IMG/VR virus record: IMGVR_UViG_3300032236_001613
Location: 186,001 to 250,000 of that record
Strand: one strand, 5' to 3'
Length of the DNA stretch: 64,000 bases
Of this stretch, positions 2,904-14,572 are shown piece after piece. Positions within the stretch are counted from its first letter, which is position 1. Each line of letters begins with the position of its first letter. The notes under the pieces were generated by a model. That model was not told the origin of the DNA and searched no databases. It worked only from the letters and a program-made list of their open reading frames with translations. The position numbers were made by a program, and so were the translations under genes.

Positions 2904-4031
2904 ATGTCTAATCACGGTCTAAAATATTTTACTCGAGAAAACTGTTTAATAAACAATAATGAAAAAATCGAAGATATATACTCATTTAAAAAGTTTCCAA
3001 TTTTTATAAATTGTACCAGTGATGAAGATAACTTAAACGATCAATTTTATGATATGAACTGGGGTATCTCTGAATCAGGACATTTACAATTGATAGACTT
3101 GTTAAACCCTACACTAATTTATTCTAACTATCACACTACCGGAGTAGTTGGTAAAATTTGGGATAATCACCATAAAAAAATATTCGATTTTATAAATCAA
3201 GATAATTTTAATAGTGTTTTAGAAATTGGCGGCGCTAGCGGTAAGCTGGTAAAACATTTTTGTAATCTTAATAGAGAATTTAATTGGTCAATTATTGAAC
3301 CTTCGATCAAATTGTCAACCATTGATCATCGAGTGACATGCATATCGGCATTTTTTGAAGATTATTCTTTTAATAAAAAGTTTGATACAATAGTGCATTC
3401 TCATTGCTTAGAACATGTATACAATCCTATTGTTTTTCTTAATAAAGTACACTCTTTACTTAACGACAATGGATACCAATATATTTCTATACCTAATATG
3501 AAATATGGATTAGAAAATAACTTTACTAATACTTTAAGTTTTGAGCATACTTTTTATATTGATGAATTTGTTTTAGAGTACTTACTAAATAAAACAGGGT
3601 TTATAGTTGTAGACAAAATAGTAGAAAACCATTCGATTTTTGTTAAAGCTAAAAAACAGAATAAATTGAATATATTACAAAAGGACTTTTTGTATATTAA
3701 AGAACTATTTTACAAATATATGTCTAATTTAAACAATGATGTTGTTACAATTAATTCAAAAATTAAGGATCAAAACTTTTATTTGTTCGGCGCACATATG
3801 TTTTCTTTATTATTATTAAATCTCGGATTGTACAACAAGAATATTGAATGTATTCTAGATAACGATACACAAAAGCAAAATAAAAGATTATATGGTACAC
3901 CGTATTTTGTAAAATCTATAGATTGTTTGAAAAATAAAGAATCACCTATTGTTGTTTTAAGAGCTGGAATTTATACTGATGAAATTAAAGAATCGATAGC
4001 AAAAGTCAATTCAACAACAATTTTTATATAA
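2904..4031 (+). CDS. Class I SAM-dependent (sugar C-methyltransferase-like) methyltransferase
   Basis: VLEIGGASG, FDTIVHSHCLEHV, FEH, C-terminal LFGA/ILDND domain. Confidence 0.8.
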   Translation: MSNHGLKYFTRENCLINNNEKIEDIYSFKKFPIFINCTSDEDNLNDQFYDMNWGISESGHLQLIDLLNPTLIYSNYHTTGVVGKIWDNHHKKIFDFINQDNFNSVLEIGGASGKLVKHFCNLNREFNWSIIEPSIKLSTIDHRVTCISAFFEDYSFNKKFDTIVHSHCLEHVYNPIVFLNKVHSLLNDNGYQYISIPNMKYGLENNFTNTLSFEHTFYIDEFVLEYLLNKTGFIVVDKIVENHSIFVKAKKQNKLNILQKDFLYIKELFYKYMSNLNNDVVTINSKIKDQNFYLFGAHMFSLLLLNLGLYNKNIECILDNDTQKQNKRLYGTPYFVKSIDCLKNKESPIVVLRAGIYTDEIKESIAKVNSTTIFI

Positions 4032-4040
4032 GGAAATACA

Positions 4041-5087
4041 ATGATTATTTGGGTAAATTGTAAAATAACAGACGTTCCATTAAATTCTTCCCCGTTGCGA
4101 TTTAATCTTAGAAAAGAAAGTAGATTTGATATAGCTCGGTATACTTTTGCTAGTTACGCAGCATTAGATTCATTAACAAGTAAAATCATTTTTAATTTAG
4201 AACTTGGAAACGAATTTTTAAATCGCAAAGAAGAAATGGAAAATTGGATAAAAAGTTTGTTTCCGCCGGAAAAATTGTCTATTTCGTGGTACAGATGCAA
4301 TAATCTAACACAATGGAAAGAAGTGCAAACAGTAATTAACAATATAAACGACGATCTTTTATATCTTGCAGGAAATGACGATCATGTTTTTTTTGATAAT
4401 AGTTTAGATTTATATAAAAAAGGATTAAACATATTAGATAACGATCCTGACGAAGATACCGCTCTAGTAAATTGTCATTATCCTGAAAGTTTAAGAGAAG
4501 CATTAAATCATCCTGAGCATCAGCTAACCGATTGTAAAAATTTTGTAAGTATAATACATCGACATTCGATTGGAATCGTTGTTATTAAAAAAGCACTATA
4601 TAATAGATTTTTATCTAAGGTAACAGACCCTGATAAAATAATGTTTCGTATGGATGATTGGCAAATAGACGGATACACAAAAATTTTTATCCCAACAAAA
4701 GAAATAAGCAAACACTTCGATGGGTACTCCCATGTAAATATCGATCCAAATGTTTGCCCTCCATTAGAAATCCCGCCTGGGTTTTTTGAAAAGAATGTAA
4801 CTATTAGATACGGGTTTGACGACTACGATCCGGAATGTGTAAATATTAATCCATTATCAACTAATTTACATGCTATCGATCCTAACGGAGCTGATTATAA
4901 ATTTTGTTTAAACGATATCCCTATTTTTTGGAGACCATTTATTAAACGTATAGTAATAGCTACTGAGTTAGATTCTCAAAAAATGTTCAAAGCTCGTAAT
5001 CAGCATTATATTGATTTAAGTTCGCCTGTGTTTTTTGGAAAAAAAATAGAGATTCCTCAGGTATGGATTGAAAATCATTTAGTGTAA
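4041..5087 (+). CDS. Hypothetical, possibly GT-A-like protein
   Basis: YLAGNDDHVF motif and glycan-cluster context. Confidence 0.4.
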   Translation: MIIWVNCKITDVPLNSSPLRFNLRKESRFDIARYTFASYAALDSLTSKIIFNLELGNEFLNRKEEMENWIKSLFPPEKLSISWYRCNNLTQWKEVQTVINNINDDLLYLAGNDDHVFFDNSLDLYKKGLNILDNDPDEDTALVNCHYPESLREALNHPEHQLTDCKNFVSIIHRHSIGIVVIKKALYNRFLSKVTDPDKIMFRMDDWQIDGYTKIFIPTKEISKHFDGYSHVNIDPNVCPPLEIPPGFFEKNVTIRYGFDDYDPECVNINPLSTNLHAIDPNGADYKFCLNDIPIFWRPFIKRIVIATELDSQKMFKARNQHYIDLSSPVFFGKKIEIPQVWIENHLV

Positions 5088-5133
5088 AATAAAAAAATCC
5101 AACAAATAAATAAAAGCCAAGAAGGTTTACACA

Positions 5134-6225
5134 ATGAATATAGTAATTCCTATGGTAGGTGCAGGGTCTCGATTTGCTAAAGAAGGTTTTCTCGAACCAA
5201 AACCTTTGATTGATGTCTTAGGTAAAACATTAATCGAGCATAGTATTGATAGCTTTAATGTTGCAGGTAAATTTATTTTTATTACTAGAGATTTTCATAA
5301 TCCCGAACATAATAAAAATTTATCTGAAATCTTAAAAAAGAAAAGACCTGAATCAAAAGAAATACGCTTAAAAAGATTAACAAGCGGAGCAGCCGAATCG
5401 GTATTAGCTGCAAAAGAATTGATTAATAACGATGAACCATTAATCATTTATAATTGCGATCAGCTTATTAATTGGAATCCAGAAGATTTTTTAAAGTTTA
5501 TCGTCAAGAAAAAACCCGATACGGCATTAGTTTTATATGACAGTACTGATCCAAAAAATAGTTTTGTCGAAATTATCCAAGGTAAAATTGTTAAATTTGT
5601 AGAAAAAGTGGTTATTTCAAATCATGCTTCTATAGGGTTTCATTATTGGGCACATGGTAGTGATTTTGTAAAAAGTGCAGAACAATTAATTGATAATTTT
5701 AGAGAAGAAGGCAAAAAAGAATGTTACATCAGCGGAACATTTGATTATTTAAAAGATAAAGTTATACTTCCTTATCATGTTCCGAATAGTGAATTCATTC
5801 CATTAGGAACTCCTGAGGATGTTGCAAAATATGTAGGTAAAGTTAAAGAGTTTACAAATGATAAACCTAAAAGCATCTTTATCGACATTGATGGTACAAT
5901 ATTAAAGCATATGCATACTATTTCTGACGTATATAAAGAAGAAGCTGTAGTATTGCCAGGAGTAATAGAAAAGTTAAATGAATGGGATAGTCAGGGATAT
6001 AAAATAATTCTCACAACTGCAAGAAAAGAGAGCACTAGAGAACACACTGAAGCACAACTTAGAAAATTCGGAATAGCATGGGATTATTTAATAATGGGCG
6101 TTGGAGGAAGAAGATATTTAATTAATGACAAATTGTCAGCAACTGATGCAGATCGTGCAGTTTCGATTAATGTTGTCACTAATGATGGGTTTAAAACTAC
6201 TAACTGGAAAAAACACGATCTATGA
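5134..6225 (+). CDS. Sugar nucleotidyltransferase fused to a C-terminal HAD phosphatase
   Basis: IVIPMVGAGSRF...PKPLI at the N-terminus; FIDIDGT, LTTAR, INDK at the C-terminus. Confidence 0.85.
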   Translation: MNIVIPMVGAGSRFAKEGFLEPKPLIDVLGKTLIEHSIDSFNVAGKFIFITRDFHNPEHNKNLSEILKKKRPESKEIRLKRLTSGAAESVLAAKELINNDEPLIIYNCDQLINWNPEDFLKFIVKKKPDTALVLYDSTDPKNSFVEIIQGKIVKFVEKVVISNHASIGFHYWAHGSDFVKSAEQLIDNFREEGKKECYISGTFDYLKDKVILPYHVPNSEFIPLGTPEDVAKYVGKVKEFTNDKPKSIFIDIDGTILKHMHTISDVYKEEAVVLPGVIEKLNEWDSQGYKIILTTARKESTREHTEAQLRKFGIAWDYLIMGVGGRRYLINDKLSATDADRAVSINVVTNDGFKTTNWKKHDL

Positions 6226-6545
6226 AAATAGTAAAATTAAAAGATATGAAAGACGGATGGTTTGTCGGCGGATTTCAACCTACAGCGTATTATACTAAGG
6301 ATGTCGAAGTAAATTATAGAATTCATCCTAAAGGGCAACTTTGGGATGTGCATTATCATAGCACTGTTACTGAAATTACTTTACTAATAAAAGGTAAAAT
6401 GATTATTCAAGGTAAAGAATTAACAGGCGGCGATATTTTTATTATCGAACCTTGGGAAATTACCGACCCAGTTTTTCTAGAAGACTGCGAAACTATTTGT
6501 GTTAAATTACCTAGTATAAATGATAAAAAAGTAGTTAAAAGTTAG
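6222..6545 (+). CDS. Cupin-domain protein
   Basis: GWFVGGF, HYH...E, GDIFIIEPWE; overlaps the upstream stop. Confidence 0.75.
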   Translation: MKIVKLKDMKDGWFVGGFQPTAYYTKDVEVNYRIHPKGQLWDVHYHSTVTEITLLIKGKMIIQGKELTGGDIFIIEPWEITDPVFLEDCETICVKLPSINDKKVVKS

Positions 6546-6550
6546 TAAAC

Positions 6551-7678
6551 ATGGATACCGTACAGAGAAACAATGATATTGTTTATAATAATAATGATTT
6601 AGAGCTCTTATATACATTTAAAAAATTCCCGGTATTTATGGGATGTACAGAACAAGAAATTAAAGACGATGTTTACTATGATTTAAATTTTTTTATCAGC
6701 CGTAAAAGCGGAATGATACAAATAAATCCAGTTGCACCGTTAGAACTAGTGTATCAGACAGAGCATCAATCCGGAGCAGTCGGAGCTGGTTGGTTTAAAC
6801 ATCATAACACATTTGCTAAATTTATAAAAGATTATAATCCTTGCAATGTATTTGAAATTGGCGGCGGACATGGATATTTAAGTAATGAATACTATACGTT
6901 AGATAGCAAAATAAATTGGACTATGATAGAACCTAATCCTTCTATTGTTGAATCTAATGCTACTGTTATTAAAGGATTTTTTAAAACTGTAGATCAGATA
7001 CCCAATCCAGTTGATGCAGTAGTTCATAGTCATTTCTTCGAGCATTTACATTATCCTGCTCAATTTGTTCAAATCTTGTCTTGTTTAAAGAACGGTATAA
7101 AAGTATTTTTTAGTATTCCTGATCTTAAAAAACAACTGGAACAAAAATATACTAATGTATTAAACTTCGAACATACATTTTATTGTACCGACGACTACGT
7201 CGAATGGATTTGGAATCACTATGGATTTAAACTATTAAAAAAGATTTATTTTGAAAACGGACATAGCATTTTTTATGCATTTGAAAAACAAGATACTACA
7301 AACACAGCCGAATATATTAATTCATATGAAACAAATAAAACTATATACTTAAACTATATTGATTATTACAAGAATTTGGTTAAAGATTTAAACAAGAGAA
7401 TTGAAGAAGAAACTAGCCCTGTTTTTATTTTCGGAGCCCATGCATCAACACAGTATCTACTTGCTTATGGCCTAAATGCTGATAAAATTAATGGAATTAT
7501 TGATAATAGTTCTCTTAAAGAAGGTAAACGTTTGTACGGAACTAAGTTTATAAGTCAAAAAACAAGTATATTAAAGGAAATTGAAAACCCTGTAGTAATA
7601 GTACGTGTAGGTATACAAAACGACGAAATTAAAAAAGATATATTAAAAAATATTAATTCAAATGTTACTTTTATTTAA
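6551..7678 (+). CDS. Class I SAM-dependent methyltransferase, paralog of 2904..4031
   Basis: VFEIGGGHG, VVHSHFFEH, FEH, IFGA, IIDNS, KRLYGT. Confidence 0.8.
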   Translation: MDTVQRNNDIVYNNNDLELLYTFKKFPVFMGCTEQEIKDDVYYDLNFFISRKSGMIQINPVAPLELVYQTEHQSGAVGAGWFKHHNTFAKFIKDYNPCNVFEIGGGHGYLSNEYYTLDSKINWTMIEPNPSIVESNATVIKGFFKTVDQIPNPVDAVVHSHFFEHLHYPAQFVQILSCLKNGIKVFFSIPDLKKQLEQKYTNVLNFEHTFYCTDDYVEWIWNHYGFKLLKKIYFENGHSIFYAFEKQDTTNTAEYINSYETNKTIYLNYIDYYKNLVKDLNKRIEEETSPVFIFGAHASTQYLLAYGLNADKINGIIDNSSLKEGKRLYGTKFISQKTSILKEIENPVVIVRVGIQNDEIKKDILKNINSNVTFI

Positions 7679-7681
7679 AGG

Positions 7682-7710
7682 TTGACAGCAGAGATAAATA
7701 AACGTATATT
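7682..7710 (+). promoter_or_regulatory. Sigma70-type promoter heading the tRNA array
   Basis: TTGACA-N17-TATATT. Confidence 0.8.
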
Positions 7711-7757
7711 AAATGACTACGATGCAATGCGTAGACGTTAATAAACAAGGAATAAAG

Positions 7758-7898
7758 ATGATTGCAACGACATTTACTACTCATAATAGTAAGACCTTTA
7801 AAGCAGGTTCTATACCCGCTTGGTCGTCAATTATGAATTATTCATATGATCGCGGTCAAGAAGGGAGTCCAAGGTCCGGAAGTGAGATGTTAGAGTAA
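7758..7898 (+). CDS. Putative attenuator leader peptide (46 aa; an in-frame ATG at 7722 is also possible)
   Basis: AAGGA SD before ATG 7758; stop codon lies in the antiterminator loop; 33 distinct codons in 46. Confidence 0.6.
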   Translation: MIATTFTTHNSKTFKAGSIPAWSSIMNYSYDRGQEGSPRSGSEMLE

Positions 7899-7935
7899 CA
7901 ACAAAACATCTAAAAACACTTAAAGGACCCTAGGA
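7868..7935 (+). promoter_or_regulatory. Antiterminator hairpin overlapping the terminator 5' arm
   Basis: GGTCC 7873-77/GGACC 7925-29, AAGTG 7880-84/CACTT 7917-21, AGATGTT 7885-91/AACATCT 7905-11. Confidence 0.65.
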
Positions 7936-7962
7936 TTAAGAACCCTGGGGTTTTTTGTTTTT
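7926..7962 (+). terminator. Intrinsic terminator (attenuator)
   Basis: GACCCTAGG/CCTGGGGTT stem followed by TTTTGTTTTT. Confidence 0.8.
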
Positions 7963-7963
7963 A

Positions 7964-8072
7964 GCAGTGTGAAAATAAGGTAACGAGGACCTTGCAGCGC
8001 ACTATAAACATGCTGTAAACGGGCGGAACCGGGGATCAAACCTGTGGCGAAAACGCAGGGAGTAAAATCCGG
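7964..8072 (+). ncRNA. Unidentified structured RNA
   Basis: Stems AAGGT/ACCTT, GCAGCG/TGCTGT, CCTGTG/CGCAGG, CCGG/CCGG; possible AGTGT/GCACT pseudoknot. Confidence 0.5.
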
Positions 8073-8122
8073 AATTTATATACTAAAGCATACCCAGTGC
8101 AGTGTTCTTTAGTATATAAATT
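8073..8122 (+). promoter_or_regulatory. Long hairpin, candidate RNase III processing site before the first tRNA
   Basis: Perfect 16-bp inverted repeat AATTTATATACTAAAG/CTTTAGTATATAAATT. Confidence 0.5.
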
Positions 8123-8126
8123 AATT

Positions 8127-8211
8127 GGGTAAGCGCCGGAGTGAGAGAGCCGGATTTGACTGTAAATCAAACGTCCCGACTGAGTAGGTGCGAATCCTAC
8201 CTTACCCACCA
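8127..8211 (+). tRNA. tRNA-Tyr(GTA)
   Basis: TTTGA-CTGTAAA-TCAAA, long variable arm, T-loop TGCGAAT, CCA. Confidence 0.9.
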
Positions 8212-8217
8212 AATAAT

Positions 8218-8321
8218 GCGGCAGTAAGTGCGTAATGGGCTAATGGTGGCCAATCCTGTCTACATGGATCAAATGTAACGGTTGCACCTTGATGTAGGTT
8301 CGAATCCTATCTGCTGCACCA
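8218..8321 (+). ncRNA. Atypical 104-nt tRNA-like gene, possible CTA anticodon
   Basis: Acceptor GCGGCAG/CTGCTGC-A-CCA and canonical T arm; irregular D and anticodon region. Confidence 0.6.
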
Positions 8322-8407
8322 CATTGCAACGGTTCTACCATCGTTAATCGGTAGCGCATACTTGGATGCGAGAAAAGACCTTTTACGTCGACCAAGACTA
8401 ATTTTAT

Positions 8408-8485
8408 GCTCCCATAGTTTAGAAGGGCCCAGAACATCCGATTCTCAGTCGGAAAACGCAGGTTCGAATCCTGCCGGGAGCGCCA
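8408..8485 (+). tRNA. tRNA-Glu(CTC)
   Basis: TCCGA-TTCTCAG-TCGGA, CCA. Confidence 0.9.
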
Positions 8486-8529: not shown

Positions 8530-9135
8530 ATGAATATCTCAGATTACAAACAATTTATAAAAGATACAGGCACTTTAATACAAATTGGTGCTTTTGATGG
8601 TGTTGCTTGCGAAGACTCAGGGTTTAGAGAATTAGTACTTTATAAAAATTATAATGCTCATTTGGTTGAACCAGTTATAGATTTTTTTCAGGCGTTACAA
8701 AAAAACTATAGTAATGCTACGAGTAATGTTCGATTTTATAATCAAGCAATTTATACAGAAAATGGAGAATTACCTTTTTTTAAAAATTACACTGACCCAT
8801 TACAATGTACTTTTATAAGAGAAAATGTAGCTGAATATCATGGGCAAACAATACTAGTACAGTCACGAACTTTTGATACTTTTTTACAAGAAAATAACAT
8901 TAATGAAATCGAAGGATTATTTATTGATGCAGAAGGTGCCGAAGATACTATACTCCAACAGCTTTTTGAAAAAACGAATATCAGACCTAATATAATTCGT
9001 TATGAATGGCCACATTTGCCTGACCCTGTAAACACAATCAGATACATTATGTCTTATGGCTATACTGTTTCTCCCTGCATCTATTCAGGCGGTCGTGTTG
9101 ATAACATTTGTATTAAAAACGACCTTTTAGTTTAA
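8530..9135 (+). CDS. FkbM-family methyltransferase
   Basis: IQIGAFDG, LVEP, LFIDAEGAE, IRYE. Confidence 0.8.
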   Translation: MNISDYKQFIKDTGTLIQIGAFDGVACEDSGFRELVLYKNYNAHLVEPVIDFFQALQKNYSNATSNVRFYNQAIYTENGELPFFKNYTDPLQCTFIRENVAEYHGQTILVQSRTFDTFLQENNINEIEGLFIDAEGAEDTILQQLFEKTNIRPNIIRYEWPHLPDPVNTIRYIMSYGYTVSPCIYSGGRVDNICIKNDLLV

Positions 9136-11541: not shown

Positions 11542-11599
11542 TAGGATGCTTCCAGCAAATAAAAAACTTTTCTTGAAAAAAAGCCAAAACAGCATCCTG
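11542..11599 (+). ncRNA. Anticodon-display RNA copy 1 (TGA stem-loop)
   Basis: AGGATGCT/AGCATCCT closing stem, CAGCAA, internal CTTTT-CTTGAAA-AAAAG. Confidence 0.7.
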
Positions 11600-11609
11600 T
11601 TTAATTTTA

Positions 11610-11704
11610 CCTCGATAGCACAGGTGTGCGGCTAGGTCTTATAAACCTGGGAGAGTTGCCAGATTAGCGACAACGGGAAGGATCGTTACCTTCATCGAGG
11701 ACCA
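11610..11704 (+). tRNA. Non-canonical tRNA with TAT anticodon and long variable arm
   Basis: CCTCGAT/ATCGAGG-A-CCA; 6-bp stem CTAGGT-CTTATAA-ACCTGG; T-loop ATCGTTA. Confidence 0.75.
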
Positions 11705-12446: not shown

Positions 12447-12561
12447 TAGGATACCTACAGCAACATAAATTACTCATGCTAAGAGAGAGGTCGTTGGTTC
12501 AAGTCCAACCTAGTCTTAGGACTAGTAGCTCAGTTGGTAGAGCACTAAAATGTGTATCCTG
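12447..12561 (+). ncRNA. Anticodon-display RNA copy 2 containing a circularly permuted tRNA (GCT loop)
   Basis: AGGATAC/GTATCCT closing stem; order is anticodon loop, variable loop, T arm, loop-closed acceptor stem, D arm. Confidence 0.8.
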
Positions 12562-12570
12562 TTTTATTCG

Positions 12571-12648
12571 GCACCGGTGGCAGAGTGGCCCAATGCAAGA
12601 GTCTGCAAAACTCTAAAGTCGTCAGTTCGAATCTGACCCGGTGCTCCA
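12571..12648 (+). tRNA. tRNA-Cys(GCA)
   Basis: AGAGT-CTGCAAA-ACTCT, U73, CCA. Confidence 0.93.
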
Positions 12649-12773: not shown

Positions 12774-12824
12774 AATTAATTAGTTTGACATCTTAATAAA
12801 GATAAGTAATAATATATCAACAAC

Positions 12825-13228: not shown

Positions 13229-13289
13229 TAGGATGCCTACAGCAAATTTAAAAATCAAAATGTCAATTTGAAAACAAATGCGCATCCTG
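13229..13289 (+). ncRNA. Anticodon-display RNA copy 3 (GTC stem-loop)
   Basis: AGGATGC/GCATCCT closing stem, CTACAGCAA, internal TCAAA-ATGTCAA-TTTGA. Confidence 0.7.
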
Positions 13290-13735: not shown

Positions 13736-14278
13736 ATGCTTAGTAAAAATATTAGTTCAGAGACAATCGAAAAATTAATTGATTCAGGTTTAAAAACCTC
13801 AGAAATTGCATCTAAGCTCGGTATCTCTACTGCAACAGTTTCTTATTGGAAAAAGAAACTCGGAAAAGAACTTAGTAATATCAAACATGATTGGAAAAAA
13901 ATTCAAGAAGCCCACAACAATGGGTCTACTTATTCTCAATTATACAAAGAGTTTGGTGTTACTAAAAGATCATTACAGAAAGCTAGAGATCGAGGAGATT
14001 TCAAGGTTAGACAGCGTAAAAAATTGTCAAAAGATGACGCTAAAATTAGAAAAAGAATTATATGCAGAGAAGCGTGGATGCGGTATTATAGTAGAAAAAA
14101 ATATCAAACTCCGGCTGATGAAGATATTAAAAAATTACAAGAATTTTATGCTAATTGCCCGGTTGGTTATGAAGTAGATCACATCATACCTATAAGTAAA
14201 GGCGGATTACATACATTGTCGAATCTTCAATACTTAACTATTAAAGAGAATAGACAAAAAGGTAATAAGATATTATAA
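13736..14278 (+). CDS. HTH-HNH homing endonuclease
   Basis: N-terminal SEIASKLGISTATVSYW; YEVDHIIPISKGGLHTLSNLQYLTIKENRQK. Confidence 0.88.
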   Translation: MLSKNISSETIEKLIDSGLKTSEIASKLGISTATVSYWKKKLGKELSNIKHDWKKIQEAHNNGSTYSQLYKEFGVTKRSLQKARDRGDFKVRQRKKLSKDDAKIRKRIICREAWMRYYSRKKYQTPADEDIKKLQEFYANCPVGYEVDHIIPISKGGLHTLSNLQYLTIKENRQKGNKIL

Positions 14279-14289
14279 TTTAACACTAT

Positions 14290-14369: not shown

Positions 14370-14443
14370 GCCCGATTAGCTCAAAAGTAGAGCGCACGAC
14401 TGATAATCGTAAGACAAAGGAGCGTTACCTTTATTGGGCACCA
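14370..14443 (+). tRNA. tRNA-Ile(GAT) with atypical D and T loops
   Basis: CACGA-CTGATAA-TCGTA; T-loop AGCGTTA; CCA. Confidence 0.85.
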
Positions 14444-14543: not shown

Positions 14544-14572
14544 TTGACCATTTTCGAAATGTTCAATATAAT
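14544..14572 (+). promoter_or_regulatory. Sigma70-type promoter
   Basis: TTGACC-N17-TATAAT. Confidence 0.7.

What the first reader, a model, noticed from the sequence alone, without database searches (positions are those of the whole stretch)
7682..7962. Leader-peptide attenuator controlling the tRNA array (general tRNA-shortage sensor)
Seen: promoter TTGACA-N17-TATATT, then a 46-codon ORF with SD, then an intrinsic terminator (7926-7962) ahead of the first tRNA. The ORF 3' end (7868-7891) can pair with 7905-7935 and sequester the terminator 5' arm, and the stop codon is in that hairpin's loop. The ORF has 33 distinct codons in 46, including all four Thr, five Ser, both Lys, both Glu, ATA and AGG codons; the in-frame extension from ATG 7722 adds Cys and Val for all 20 amino acids. 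Known: trp/his-type attenuation logic. Inference: a ribosome reaching the stop blocks the antiterminator and transcription ends, while stalling on any depleted or cleaved tRNA allows read-through into the phage tRNAs.
Basis: partly seen in the sequence, partly recalled or inferred. Interest (0 to 1): 0.92.

Follow-up and report, generated by a model that had tools for sequence, protein, structure and literature searches.

The report
Translation-gated terminator before phage tRNAs
In front of the first tRNA genes of an uncultured jumbo phage lies a conserved promoter, a small translated gene and a terminator that folds only when a ribosome has read to the end of that gene. This looks like a translation-sensing switch for phage tRNA expression, but it is untested, and the claim that it senses shortage of any tRNA through its codon variety is not supported.

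Summary
All the described parts sit at the stated coordinates: a TTGACA-N17-TATATT promoter, an AAGGA ribosome-binding site, a 46-codon ORF, a long hairpin with the stop codon in its loop, and a 7-bp terminator stem followed by a U-tract.

Eight sequence variants from related metagenomic phage contigs keep every part. Homology with them begins 11-13 nt before the -35 element. The hairpin (antiterminator) and the terminator each have one compensatory A-U to G-C pair.

In free RNA the antiterminator equals or beats the terminator in all 8 variants. Predicted terminator probability is 0.004 or less in seven of them. When a ribosome is modelled along the ORF, terminator probability jumps from about 0.01 or less to 0.99 at codons 32-36.

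The ORF shows a coding signature: core dN/dS is 0.18, against 0.70 and 1.16 in the other two frames.

- The codon variety (33 of 46) is what the ORF's own base composition predicts, and it is not kept in relatives.
- The upstream in-frame extension is absent in 3 of 8 variants.
- There are no regulatory codon runs, and no structure that would make untranslated RNA terminate.

The conserved peptide core is unexplained.

Verdict: a plausible new variant of ribosome-mediated attenuation, at about 0.5 confidence. It would gate only the first RNA and tRNA genes, not the whole array.

The parts
7682..7710 (+). Sigma-70-type promoter: TTGACA, 17 nt, TATATT. The likely transcription start is near 7717.
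   Evidence: 11 of 12 match. The -35 is invariant and the -10 is kept in 7 of 8 variants; L024 has TTGACA-N18-TAAAAT instead. Homology with relatives starts at 7669-7671, while the upstream genes differ.
7717..7734 (+). 5' stem-loop at the start of the transcript
   Evidence: A compensatory C-G to U-A change occurs in the L010/L012/L018 variant. L024 has a different hairpin sequence at the same place.
7747..7751 (+). Shine-Dalgarno AAGGA, 6 nt before the ATG
   Evidence: TAAACAAGGAA is invariant in all variants.
7758..7898 (+). Leader ORF of 46 codons plus TAA. The conserved peptide core is codons 9-36.
   Evidence: Homologous ORFs of 40-47 codons occur in all relatives. Core dN/dS is 0.18 in frame, against 0.70 and 1.16 out of frame. 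I hand-counted 8 nonsynonymous of 18 changes, where 78% would be expected, P = 0.002. One variant has an in-frame +3 insertion.
7818..7868 (+). Predicted helix inside the ORF. It could be a pause or folding element.
   Evidence: Consensus fold. Of its paired columns that vary, five of six vary only by one-sided G-U/G-C changes, one pair is broken in one sequence, and there is no double change.
7862..7946 (+). Antiterminator hairpin. The 5' arm (7862-7891) is ORF codons 36-45. The apical loop (7892-7904) holds the stop codon. The 3' arm (7905-7946) covers the terminator's 5' arm and part of its 3' arm.
   Evidence: It is part of the minimum-energy fold in all variants. 97.5% of cells are paired, and pair 7885-7911 is A-U in 4 variants and G-C in 2. 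It is as stable as or more stable than the terminator state in 8 of 8 variants.
7927..7962 (+). Intrinsic terminator: 7-bp G+C-rich stem, 9-nt loop and a 12-nt U-tract
   Evidence: 95.9% of cells are paired. Pair 7932-7946 is A-U in 5 variants and G-C in 2, and pair 7931-7947 occurs as U-G, U-A and C-G.
7963..8126 (+). Conserved structured RNA of unknown kind. It is the first product of read-through.
   Evidence: Its main part (7963-8076) has 93% mean pairwise identity and its last hairpin (8077-8126) 82%. The consensus fold has four helices with three compensatory pairs. No Rfam match at E up to 10.
8127..8211 (+). tRNA-Tyr (GTA), the first tRNA after the terminator
   Evidence: Rfam tRNA model, 42.1 bits. 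ARAGORN finds it at a relaxed threshold. Present in the relatives that extend this far.
8218..8324 (+). Atypical long tRNA-like gene with a T-loop (GGTTCGAATCC) and an encoded CCA end
   Evidence: Sequence. Rfam tRNA model gives only 15.9 bits. Relaxed ARAGORN calls the anticodon either CTA or CCT with an intron. Absent from L023 and L024.

Best explanation
This is a ribosome-mediated transcription attenuator with read-through as the default state.

Proposed mechanism:
1. Transcripts start from the promoter at 7682 and carry a small translated ORF.
2. The last 12 or so codons of the ORF form, together with the 3' untranslated region, a long hairpin. This hairpin sequesters the 5' arm of the intrinsic terminator at 7928-7950, and partly its 3' arm.
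3. If the leading ribosome is absent, or is delayed anywhere in about the first 33 codons, the hairpin forms first. RNA polymerase then runs on into the structured RNA (7963-8126), tRNA-Tyr, a tRNA-like gene, tRNA-Glu and the genes up to about 9300.
4. If the ribosome keeps pace and is in the last 11 or so codons, or at the stop codon, it melts the hairpin's 5' arm. The terminator then folds and transcription stops near 7955-7960.

Fast translation would therefore shut off this segment, and slow translation would turn it on.

Shown here: the parts, their conservation, the covariation, the energetics and the coding signature.
Inferred: that ribosome and polymerase are coupled in the unknown host, that the terminator works, and that the sensed variable is elongation speed. 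What exactly slows the ribosome is not determined. It could be general tRNA supply, a particular codon, or the conserved nascent peptide.
For: - Conserved unit. The promoter, SD, ATG, stop codon in the loop, hairpin, terminator and downstream RNAs are present in 8 variants from independent metagenomes. The homology block starts at the -35 element although the upstream genes differ.
- Both rival helices are supported. The antiterminator has 97.5% of cells paired and one compensatory A-U/G-C pair, and 10 of 500 shuffles reach the observed covariation score. The terminator has 95.9% paired and one compensatory pair, with 17 of 500 shuffles.
- Energetics. In free RNA (7857-7950 equivalents) the antiterminator state is within 0.3 kcal/mol of the terminator state (window) or up to 4.8 kcal/mol more stable. 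Terminator-core probability is 0.004 or less in 7 variants and 0.117 in L007. The barrier from antiterminator to terminator is 4-12 kcal/mol.
- Comparison with other terminators. The two other clean terminators in the window are part of their minimum-energy folds; this one is not.
- Ribosome model. Moving a ribosome footprint along the ORF gives terminator probability of about 0.01 or less for A-site codons up to 31-34, and 0.99 from codon 36 to the stop, in the four variants modelled.
- The ORF is translated in this frame. Core dN/dS is 0.18 against 0.70 and 1.16 in the other frames. Changes are mostly synonymous (P = 0.002). There is an in-frame +3 insertion, and the SD and ATG are invariant.
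- No sigma-70-like promoter lies on the + strand between 7711 and 8684.
Against: - There are no expression data of any kind.
- Only 8 closely related variants are available, with 88-95% identity in the hairpin and terminator region. This gives two compensatory pairs in all, and the tool itself warns that its shuffle counts are not probabilities.
- There are no runs or enrichment of any codon, and no anti-antiterminator. Untranslated RNA is therefore predicted to read through, unlike trp or his attenuators.
- The peptide core is under purifying selection, which a simple sensor does not explain.
- The window's own variant has the weakest antiterminator, because of AA at 7871-7872. Its terminator and antiterminator states differ by only 0.3 kcal/mol.
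- A conserved TATAAATT lies 12 nt before tRNA-Tyr and could be an independent promoter of another class.
- Later tRNAs have their own promoters.
- The host is unknown, and so is the degree of transcription-translation coupling in it.
Confidence: 0.5

Rival explanations
1. This is an ordinary small early phage gene encoding a 46-aa protein, with its own promoter and a structurally weakened, constitutively leaky terminator. The long hairpin would serve as a 3' stabiliser or a double-strand RNase processing site that separates the mRNA from the tRNA precursor. Nothing is sensed.
For: - The peptide core is under purifying selection, like a normal gene.
- Its synonymous divergence (dS 0.28 against L004) is not lower than that of neighbouring genes (0.06-0.13), so there is no unusual constraint on codon choice.
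- Phage tRNA regions are mosaics of small genes, promoters and terminators.
- The hairpin has about 24 bp interrupted by internal loops.
Against: - No fold is predicted for the peptide (pLDDT 54.5), and no family or structure match exists.
- The peptide's C-terminal 10 residues evolve nearly neutrally (dN 0.109, dS 0.139). Meanwhile an E-to-G change is compensated in the untranslated 3' arm, so the RNA structure is what is selected there.
- The complementarity specifically covers the terminator's 5' arm, and the stop codon is always in the loop.
- A hairpin whose 5' arm is coding is melted at every round of translation, which suits a switch better than a stabiliser.
Confidence: 0.3
2. The attenuator architecture is as in the best explanation, but the sensor is the conserved nascent peptide (an arrest peptide) responding to one specific signal, or to Tyr and other particular codons, rather than to general elongation speed.
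For: - The conserved core, codons 9-36, ends exactly where the modelled switch from read-through to termination occurs.
- Residues H9, W22, M26, S29, Y30, Q34, E35 and G36 are invariant in 10 peptides.
- The first tRNA downstream is tRNA-Tyr, and the core holds the motif N-Y-S-Y-D.
- There is a precedent for leader peptides with a function of their own: peTrpL of Sinorhizobium meliloti (PMC7968998).
Against:
- Two Tyr codons are not an enrichment.
- Y28 is Leu in P0006 and P0011.
- A stall at the end of the core would favour termination, not read-through.
Confidence: 0.1
3. The unit is a non-coding small RNA of about 240 nt, ended by the terminator. The ORF would be incidental and not translated.
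For: - The transcript is unusually structured (z = -4.08).
- The non-coding 3' arm (95% identity) and the downstream RNA (93%) are as conserved as the ORF core (93%).
- A 7-nt deletion in the L007 group shifts the frame of the last codons.
- Most variable pairs in the helix inside the ORF change only between G-U and G-C.
Against: - The low dN/dS is specific to the ORF's frame.
- The SD and ATG are invariant, with 6-nt spacing.
- The ORF is kept open at 59% amino-acid identity in P0006 and P0011.
- There is an in-frame +3 insertion.
- After the 7-nt deletion the frame still closes, 11 nt upstream of the usual stop.
Confidence: 0.07

Closest known systems
Leader-peptide attenuators of amino-acid operons (trp, his, leu, thr, pheA, ilv of enterobacteria)
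   Same: Both have a promoter-proximal short ORF with an SD, and an intrinsic terminator before the regulated genes. Both have an antiterminator that shares a strand with the terminator. In both, a ribosome at the leader's stop codon blocks the antiterminator, and a ribosome stalled earlier allows it.
   Different: - There are no tandem or enriched regulatory codons.
- There is no 1:2 protector or pause hairpin that makes untranslated RNA terminate, so the default here is read-through.
- The leader is longer (46 codons) and has a conserved peptide core.
- The regulated genes are RNAs (a structured RNA and tRNAs) in a phage, not biosynthetic enzymes.
- Rfam His_leader and trpB models score only 16-19 bits, against thresholds of 49-59.
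toiL uORF of the Escherichia coli topAI-yjhQ transcript (PMC12121999)
   Same: A short upstream ORF acts as a broad sensor of translation stress. Ribosome stalling within it switches on the downstream genes.
   Different: toiL works through Rho-dependent termination and unmasking of a ribosome-binding site, not through an intrinsic terminator/antiterminator pair. It is bacterial and controls a toxin-antitoxin pair. There is no sequence relation.
Sinorhizobium meliloti trpL attenuator, which yields the sRNA rnTrpL and the peptide peTrpL (PMC7968998)
   Same: It is an attenuator whose terminated transcript and leader peptide have functions of their own. This would reconcile a conserved peptide with an attenuator.
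   Different: It has Trp regulatory codons and controls trp genes. There is no evidence here for any trans-acting function.
Stable RNAs and small ORFs interspersed in the tRNA clusters of T4 and T5 (from my own knowledge)
   Same: Phage tRNA clusters there also carry extra small RNAs, promoters, terminators and small ORFs.
   Different: To my knowledge no translation-dependent terminator has been described in them. My literature searches found no report of a leader-peptide attenuator before phage tRNA genes.

Membership tests
Ribosome-mediated (leader-peptide) transcription attenuator | Short ORF with a ribosome-binding site close to the promoter, upstream of the regulated genes | tested here: met
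   Promoter at 7682-7710, SD at 7747-7751, ORF at 7758-7898. All are conserved.
Ribosome-mediated (leader-peptide) transcription attenuator | Intrinsic terminator between the leader ORF and the regulated genes | tested here: met
   7-bp G+C-rich stem plus a 12-nt U-tract at 7927-7962, with a compensatory pair in relatives. Its function in vivo was not tested.
Ribosome-mediated (leader-peptide) transcription attenuator | Antiterminator helix mutually exclusive with the terminator | tested here: met
   The 7866-7877 segment pairs with 7925-7937, which includes the terminator's 5' arm. It is part of the minimum-energy fold of all 8 variants and is supported by covariation in the same hairpin.
Ribosome-mediated (leader-peptide) transcription attenuator | Leader stop codon placed so that a terminating ribosome occludes the antiterminator | tested here: met
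   The stop codon (7896-7898) lies in the apical loop, and TAA is invariant there. The modelled footprint gives terminator probability 0.99 from codon 36 to the stop. This is a model, not a measurement.
Ribosome-mediated (leader-peptide) transcription attenuator | Regulatory codons: runs or enrichment of the codons whose tRNA charging is sensed | tested here: not met
   No codon occurs more than 3 times and there are no tandem repeats. The codon diversity equals that of composition-matched shuffles.
Ribosome-mediated (leader-peptide) transcription attenuator | Protector or pause hairpin (1:2) that sequesters the antiterminator when the leader is not translated | tested here: not met
   In free full-length RNA the antiterminator persists in all variants. 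The helix inside the ORF (7818-7868) overlaps it by only 3-7 nt.
Ribosome-mediated (leader-peptide) transcription attenuator | Read-through depends on leader translation | not testable with these tools
   This needs reporter fusions, coupled in vitro transcription-translation, or Term-seq.
Rfam leader families (His_leader RF00514, trpB RF04312) and T-box | Match to the covariance model at its gathering score | tested here: not met
   His_leader scores 16.2 bits against 49. trpB scores 19.3 bits against 59, and only its terminator part aligns. There is no T-box hit at E up to 10.
Known protein families (Pfam, PHROGs, PADLOC, PDB) for the 46-aa product | Significant profile match | tested here: not met
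   The only match is a sub-threshold Phage_pRha hit (17.4 bits against 29.9) to the non-conserved 61-aa extended form. Nothing in PHROGs, PADLOC or PDB. The AF2 model has pLDDT 54.5.

The most novel reading that the evidence does not exclude
The unit is a feedback sensor of translation capacity. Any slowing of ribosomes in the first 33 or so codons of the leader switches on transcription of the phage's own tRNA-Tyr, neighbouring tRNAs and an unknown structured RNA. The slowing could come from a depleted tRNA pool, from tRNA cleavage by host defence nucleases, or from a general loss of elongation capacity during infection. This would be the first attenuator known to control tRNA genes and the first found in a phage tRNA cluster.
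Probability: 0.25. Interest if true: 0.85.

Novelty: new variant of a known kind. Interest (0 to 1): 0.62.

Why it matters
Phage tRNA genes are currently explained either as codon-usage compensation or as a counter to host defences that cleave tRNAs (PMC10264068, PMC11555353). How their expression is controlled is hardly known. A terminator that fires only when translation is running well would make tRNA production respond to need. It would also extend leader-peptide attenuation from amino-acid operons to RNA genes, and to a design without regulatory codons and with read-through as the default. The element is short (about 280 nt) and self-contained, so it can be tested directly in a laboratory strain. 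It could also serve as a compact reporter of translation speed.

Tried and rejected
- **Cultured-phage relatives:** none found by megablast, blastn or tblastn with the region or the peptide. Only remote hits to neighbouring proteins in Synechococcus phage S-SKS1 and some jumbo phages.
- **Neighbouring proteins as bait in IMG/VR:** these returned only the source contig.
- **DNA patterns from the non-coding arm and the downstream RNA:** these found the same three IMG/VR contigs. This gives no detection of relatives independent of the ORF beyond those three.
- **Bacterial and archaeal genomes:** no relative found.
- **DNA of the most divergent homologues (P0006, P0011):** not held, so the most informative covariation test could not be done.
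- **Rfam:** at a permissive threshold, only chance-level hits in 7650-8420 apart from tRNA.
- **Codon diversity as a designed feature:** rejected.
- **The 61-codon extended ORF:** rejected.
- **Enrichment of Tyr/His/Asn/Asp (NAY) codons:** considered and dropped. There are 6 of 46, which by my rough estimate (not computed) is not above what an A+T-rich proteome would give.
- **A register error of my own:** my first count of stem a was one column off. I corrected it.
- **Structure prediction of the peptide:** uninformative.
- **Literature:** searches for a described attenuator before phage tRNA genes found none.

Full report
**Source and setting.** The window is part of IMGVR_UViG_3300032236_001613, a 328-kb uncultured phage contig. 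It covers contig positions 186001-250000, which I derived from the locus ranges. The collection of cultured phages holds no close relative.

The finding lies between a sugar-modification and methyltransferase gene cluster and an array of at least 27 tRNA genes interspersed with small protein genes.

- The promoter is TTGACA (7682-7687), 17 nt, TATATT (7705-7710).
- AAGGA (7747-7751) lies 6 nt before the ATG at 7758. The ORF runs to TAA at 7896-7898 and has 46 codons.
- The terminator stem is 7928-7934 paired with 7944-7950, with a 9-nt loop and the U-tract TTTTTTGTTTTT. The tool's scan allows loops of at most 8 nt, which is why it did not list this terminator.
- The ORF's 3' end pairs with the 3' untranslated region in four stems: 7885-7891/7905-7911, 7880-7884/7917-7921, 7873-7877/7925-7929 and 7866-7870/7933-7937. 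In addition, 7862-7865 pairs with 7943-7946. The stop codon is in the apical loop.
- The transcript folds much better than shuffles (z = -4.08).

**Relatives.** A protein search with the ORF found homologous small ORFs in metagenomes. Their contigs gave 8 distinct DNA variants of the unit: the window, L004, the L007 group, the L012/L018 group, L013, L020, L023 and L024/L025.

Homology starts 11-13 nt before the -35 element and runs for about 730 nt, to 8396, at 89-94% identity. The genes upstream of the promoter differ between relatives. The unit therefore travels as one block: promoter, ORF, hairpin, terminator, structured RNA and tRNA-Tyr.

**Is the ORF translated?** The evidence favours translation.
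- The SD and ATG are invariant.
- One variant has an in-frame ATA insertion.
- For codons 9-36, mean pairwise dN/dS is 0.18 in the ORF's frame, against 0.70 and 1.16 in the other two frames.
- By my count of minimal changes on the alignment, 8 of 18 are nonsynonymous where 78% would be expected (P = 0.002).
- One Gly codon uses all four synonymous forms across the variants.

The peptide's ends behave differently. Codons 2-8 have dN/dS of 1.7. Codons 37-46 evolve close to neutrally (dN 0.109, dS 0.139). In the L007 group a 7-nt deletion shifts the frame of the last codons, and a new TGA closes it 11 nt upstream of the usual stop.

The product has no family, no structural match and no confident fold.

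**Are the two alternative helices real?** Both are supported, on a small sample. On the 8-variant alignment:
- The antiterminator has 97.5% of cells paired. Pair 7885-7911 is A-U in four variants and G-C in two. The change on the ORF side is a Glu-to-Gly replacement, and it is compensated in the untranslated arm.
- The terminator has 95.9% of cells paired. Pair 7932-7946 is A-U in five variants and G-C in two.

Sliding the partner columns by one collapses pairing to 43-67% in both cases. The sample is small and closely related, so this is support, not proof.

**Energetics.** For RNA running from the transcription start to the end of the terminator stem, the minimum-energy fold lacks the terminator in the six variants folded at full length. 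Forcing the terminator costs 0.8-11 kcal/mol.

For the 3' part alone, in all 8 variants, the antiterminator state is as stable as or more stable than the terminator state, even with the terminator's 3' arm left unpaired. The terminator core has probability 0.004 or less in seven variants and 0.117 in L007. The barrier from antiterminator to terminator is 4-12 kcal/mol.

The two other clean terminators in the window are part of their local minimum-energy folds. That is only two controls.

I then removed the RNA covered by, or behind, a ribosome placed at each codon in turn. Terminator probability was about 0.01 or less for A-site codons up to 31-34, and 0.99 from codon 36 to the stop, in the four variants tested. 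The switch point coincides with the end of the conserved peptide core.

- *Codon diversity.* The value of 33 of 46 is high compared with this phage's genes (26.7 +/- 2.9; 1.8% of windows reach 33). However, it equals what shuffles of the ORF's own bases give (32.4 +/- 2.2; 48% reach 33). The ORF is simply less A+T-rich than the genome (40.6% G+C against 35.9%).
- *Conservation of the codon features.* The features cited are not conserved. The Thr-rich N-terminal codons are the most variable part, and AGG is GGG in every relative.
- *The upstream extension.* It has no start codon in L004, L013 and L020, and it would begin at or before the likely transcription start.
- *Attenuator details.* There are no regulatory codon runs and no protector hairpin. 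Membership in the classical trp/his family fails on those two features, although the switch logic is the same.
- *Scope.* Sigma-70-like promoters lie directly before tRNA-Gly, tRNA-Gln and tRNA-Ala. Only the first segment could be gated: the structured RNA, tRNA-Tyr, the tRNA-like gene, tRNA-Glu, an FkbM-type methyltransferase gene, tRNA-Asp and tRNA-Phe.
- *A possible independent promoter.* A conserved TATAAATT lies 12 nt before tRNA-Tyr and might be a promoter of another class.

**Conclusion.** The best reading is a translation-gated terminator, a new variant of ribosome-mediated attenuation with read-through as the default (confidence about 0.5). What the ribosome senses is unknown.

The main rival is an ordinary small gene with a leaky, structured 3' end (about 0.3). 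The conserved peptide core is the chief unexplained fact. It may mean an independent small protein, a nascent regulatory peptide, or a dual-function leader as in Sinorhizobium meliloti trpL (PMC7968998).

The closest functional analogue for broad sensing of translation stress is the toiL uORF (PMC12121999), which works through Rho and not through an intrinsic terminator. I found no report of an attenuator before phage tRNA genes. That search covers only the open-access library.

Noticed in passing
window 7963-8126: A conserved structured RNA of unknown kind lies directly after the terminator and directly before tRNA-Tyr. It has four helices, three of them with a compensatory pair. Its main part (7963-8076) is 93% identical among relatives. 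There is no Rfam match at E up to 10.
   Followed up: partly
window 8218-8324: An atypical tRNA-like gene of about 100 nt, with a 7-bp acceptor stem, the T-loop GGTTCGAATCC and an encoded CCA. Relaxed ARAGORN reads the anticodon as CTA (amber-reading), or as CCT with an intron. It is absent from relatives L023 and L024. TAG is the rarest stop codon in the window (4 of 55 ORFs).
   Followed up: partly
window 8127-8211 and 14370-14440: Two tRNA genes were missed by default ARAGORN but found by the Rfam tRNA model. They are tRNA-Tyr (GTA) at 42 bits and a second tRNA at 54.5 bits. The array therefore holds at least 27 tRNAs.
   Followed up: partly
window 12463-12572: A sub-threshold match to the Y RNA-like family YrlA (44 bits against a threshold of 69; E = 3e-7, full model length). 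It lies between tRNA-Met and tRNA-Cys.
   Followed up: no
window 12785-12813, 14251-14279, 14544-14572: Sigma-70-like promoters matching 11 of 12 consensus positions lie directly upstream of tRNA-Gly, tRNA-Gln and tRNA-Ala. The array therefore seems to be transcribed in several units.
   Followed up: no
window 2876, 13724, 14444, 17406, 48570 (and 8115): TATAAATA occurs 6 times on the + strand, and 5 of these lie 12-28 nt before a gene or tRNA start. The variant TATAAATT lies 12 nt before tRNA-Tyr and is conserved in relatives. This may be a second promoter class.
   Followed up: no
window 2904-7678 and 8530-9135; loci L004, L005-L009, L024, L025: A cluster of sugar-nucleotide and methyltransferase genes (nucleotidyltransferase-HAD fusion, C-methyltransferase, FkbM-type methyltransferase) flanks and interrupts the tRNA array. 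Gene content around the conserved RNA block is mosaic among relatives. In L024 the 375-aa methyltransferase lies downstream of the unit instead of upstream.
   Followed up: partly
window 11610-11704: tRNA-Ile (TAT) is called at 95 nt, which is unusually long for an Ile tRNA. Weak, repeated small-hairpin hits (Dicty_Class_I_RNA model, E 0.02-0.1) lie between tRNAs at 11544-11599 and 13231-13289.
   Followed up: no
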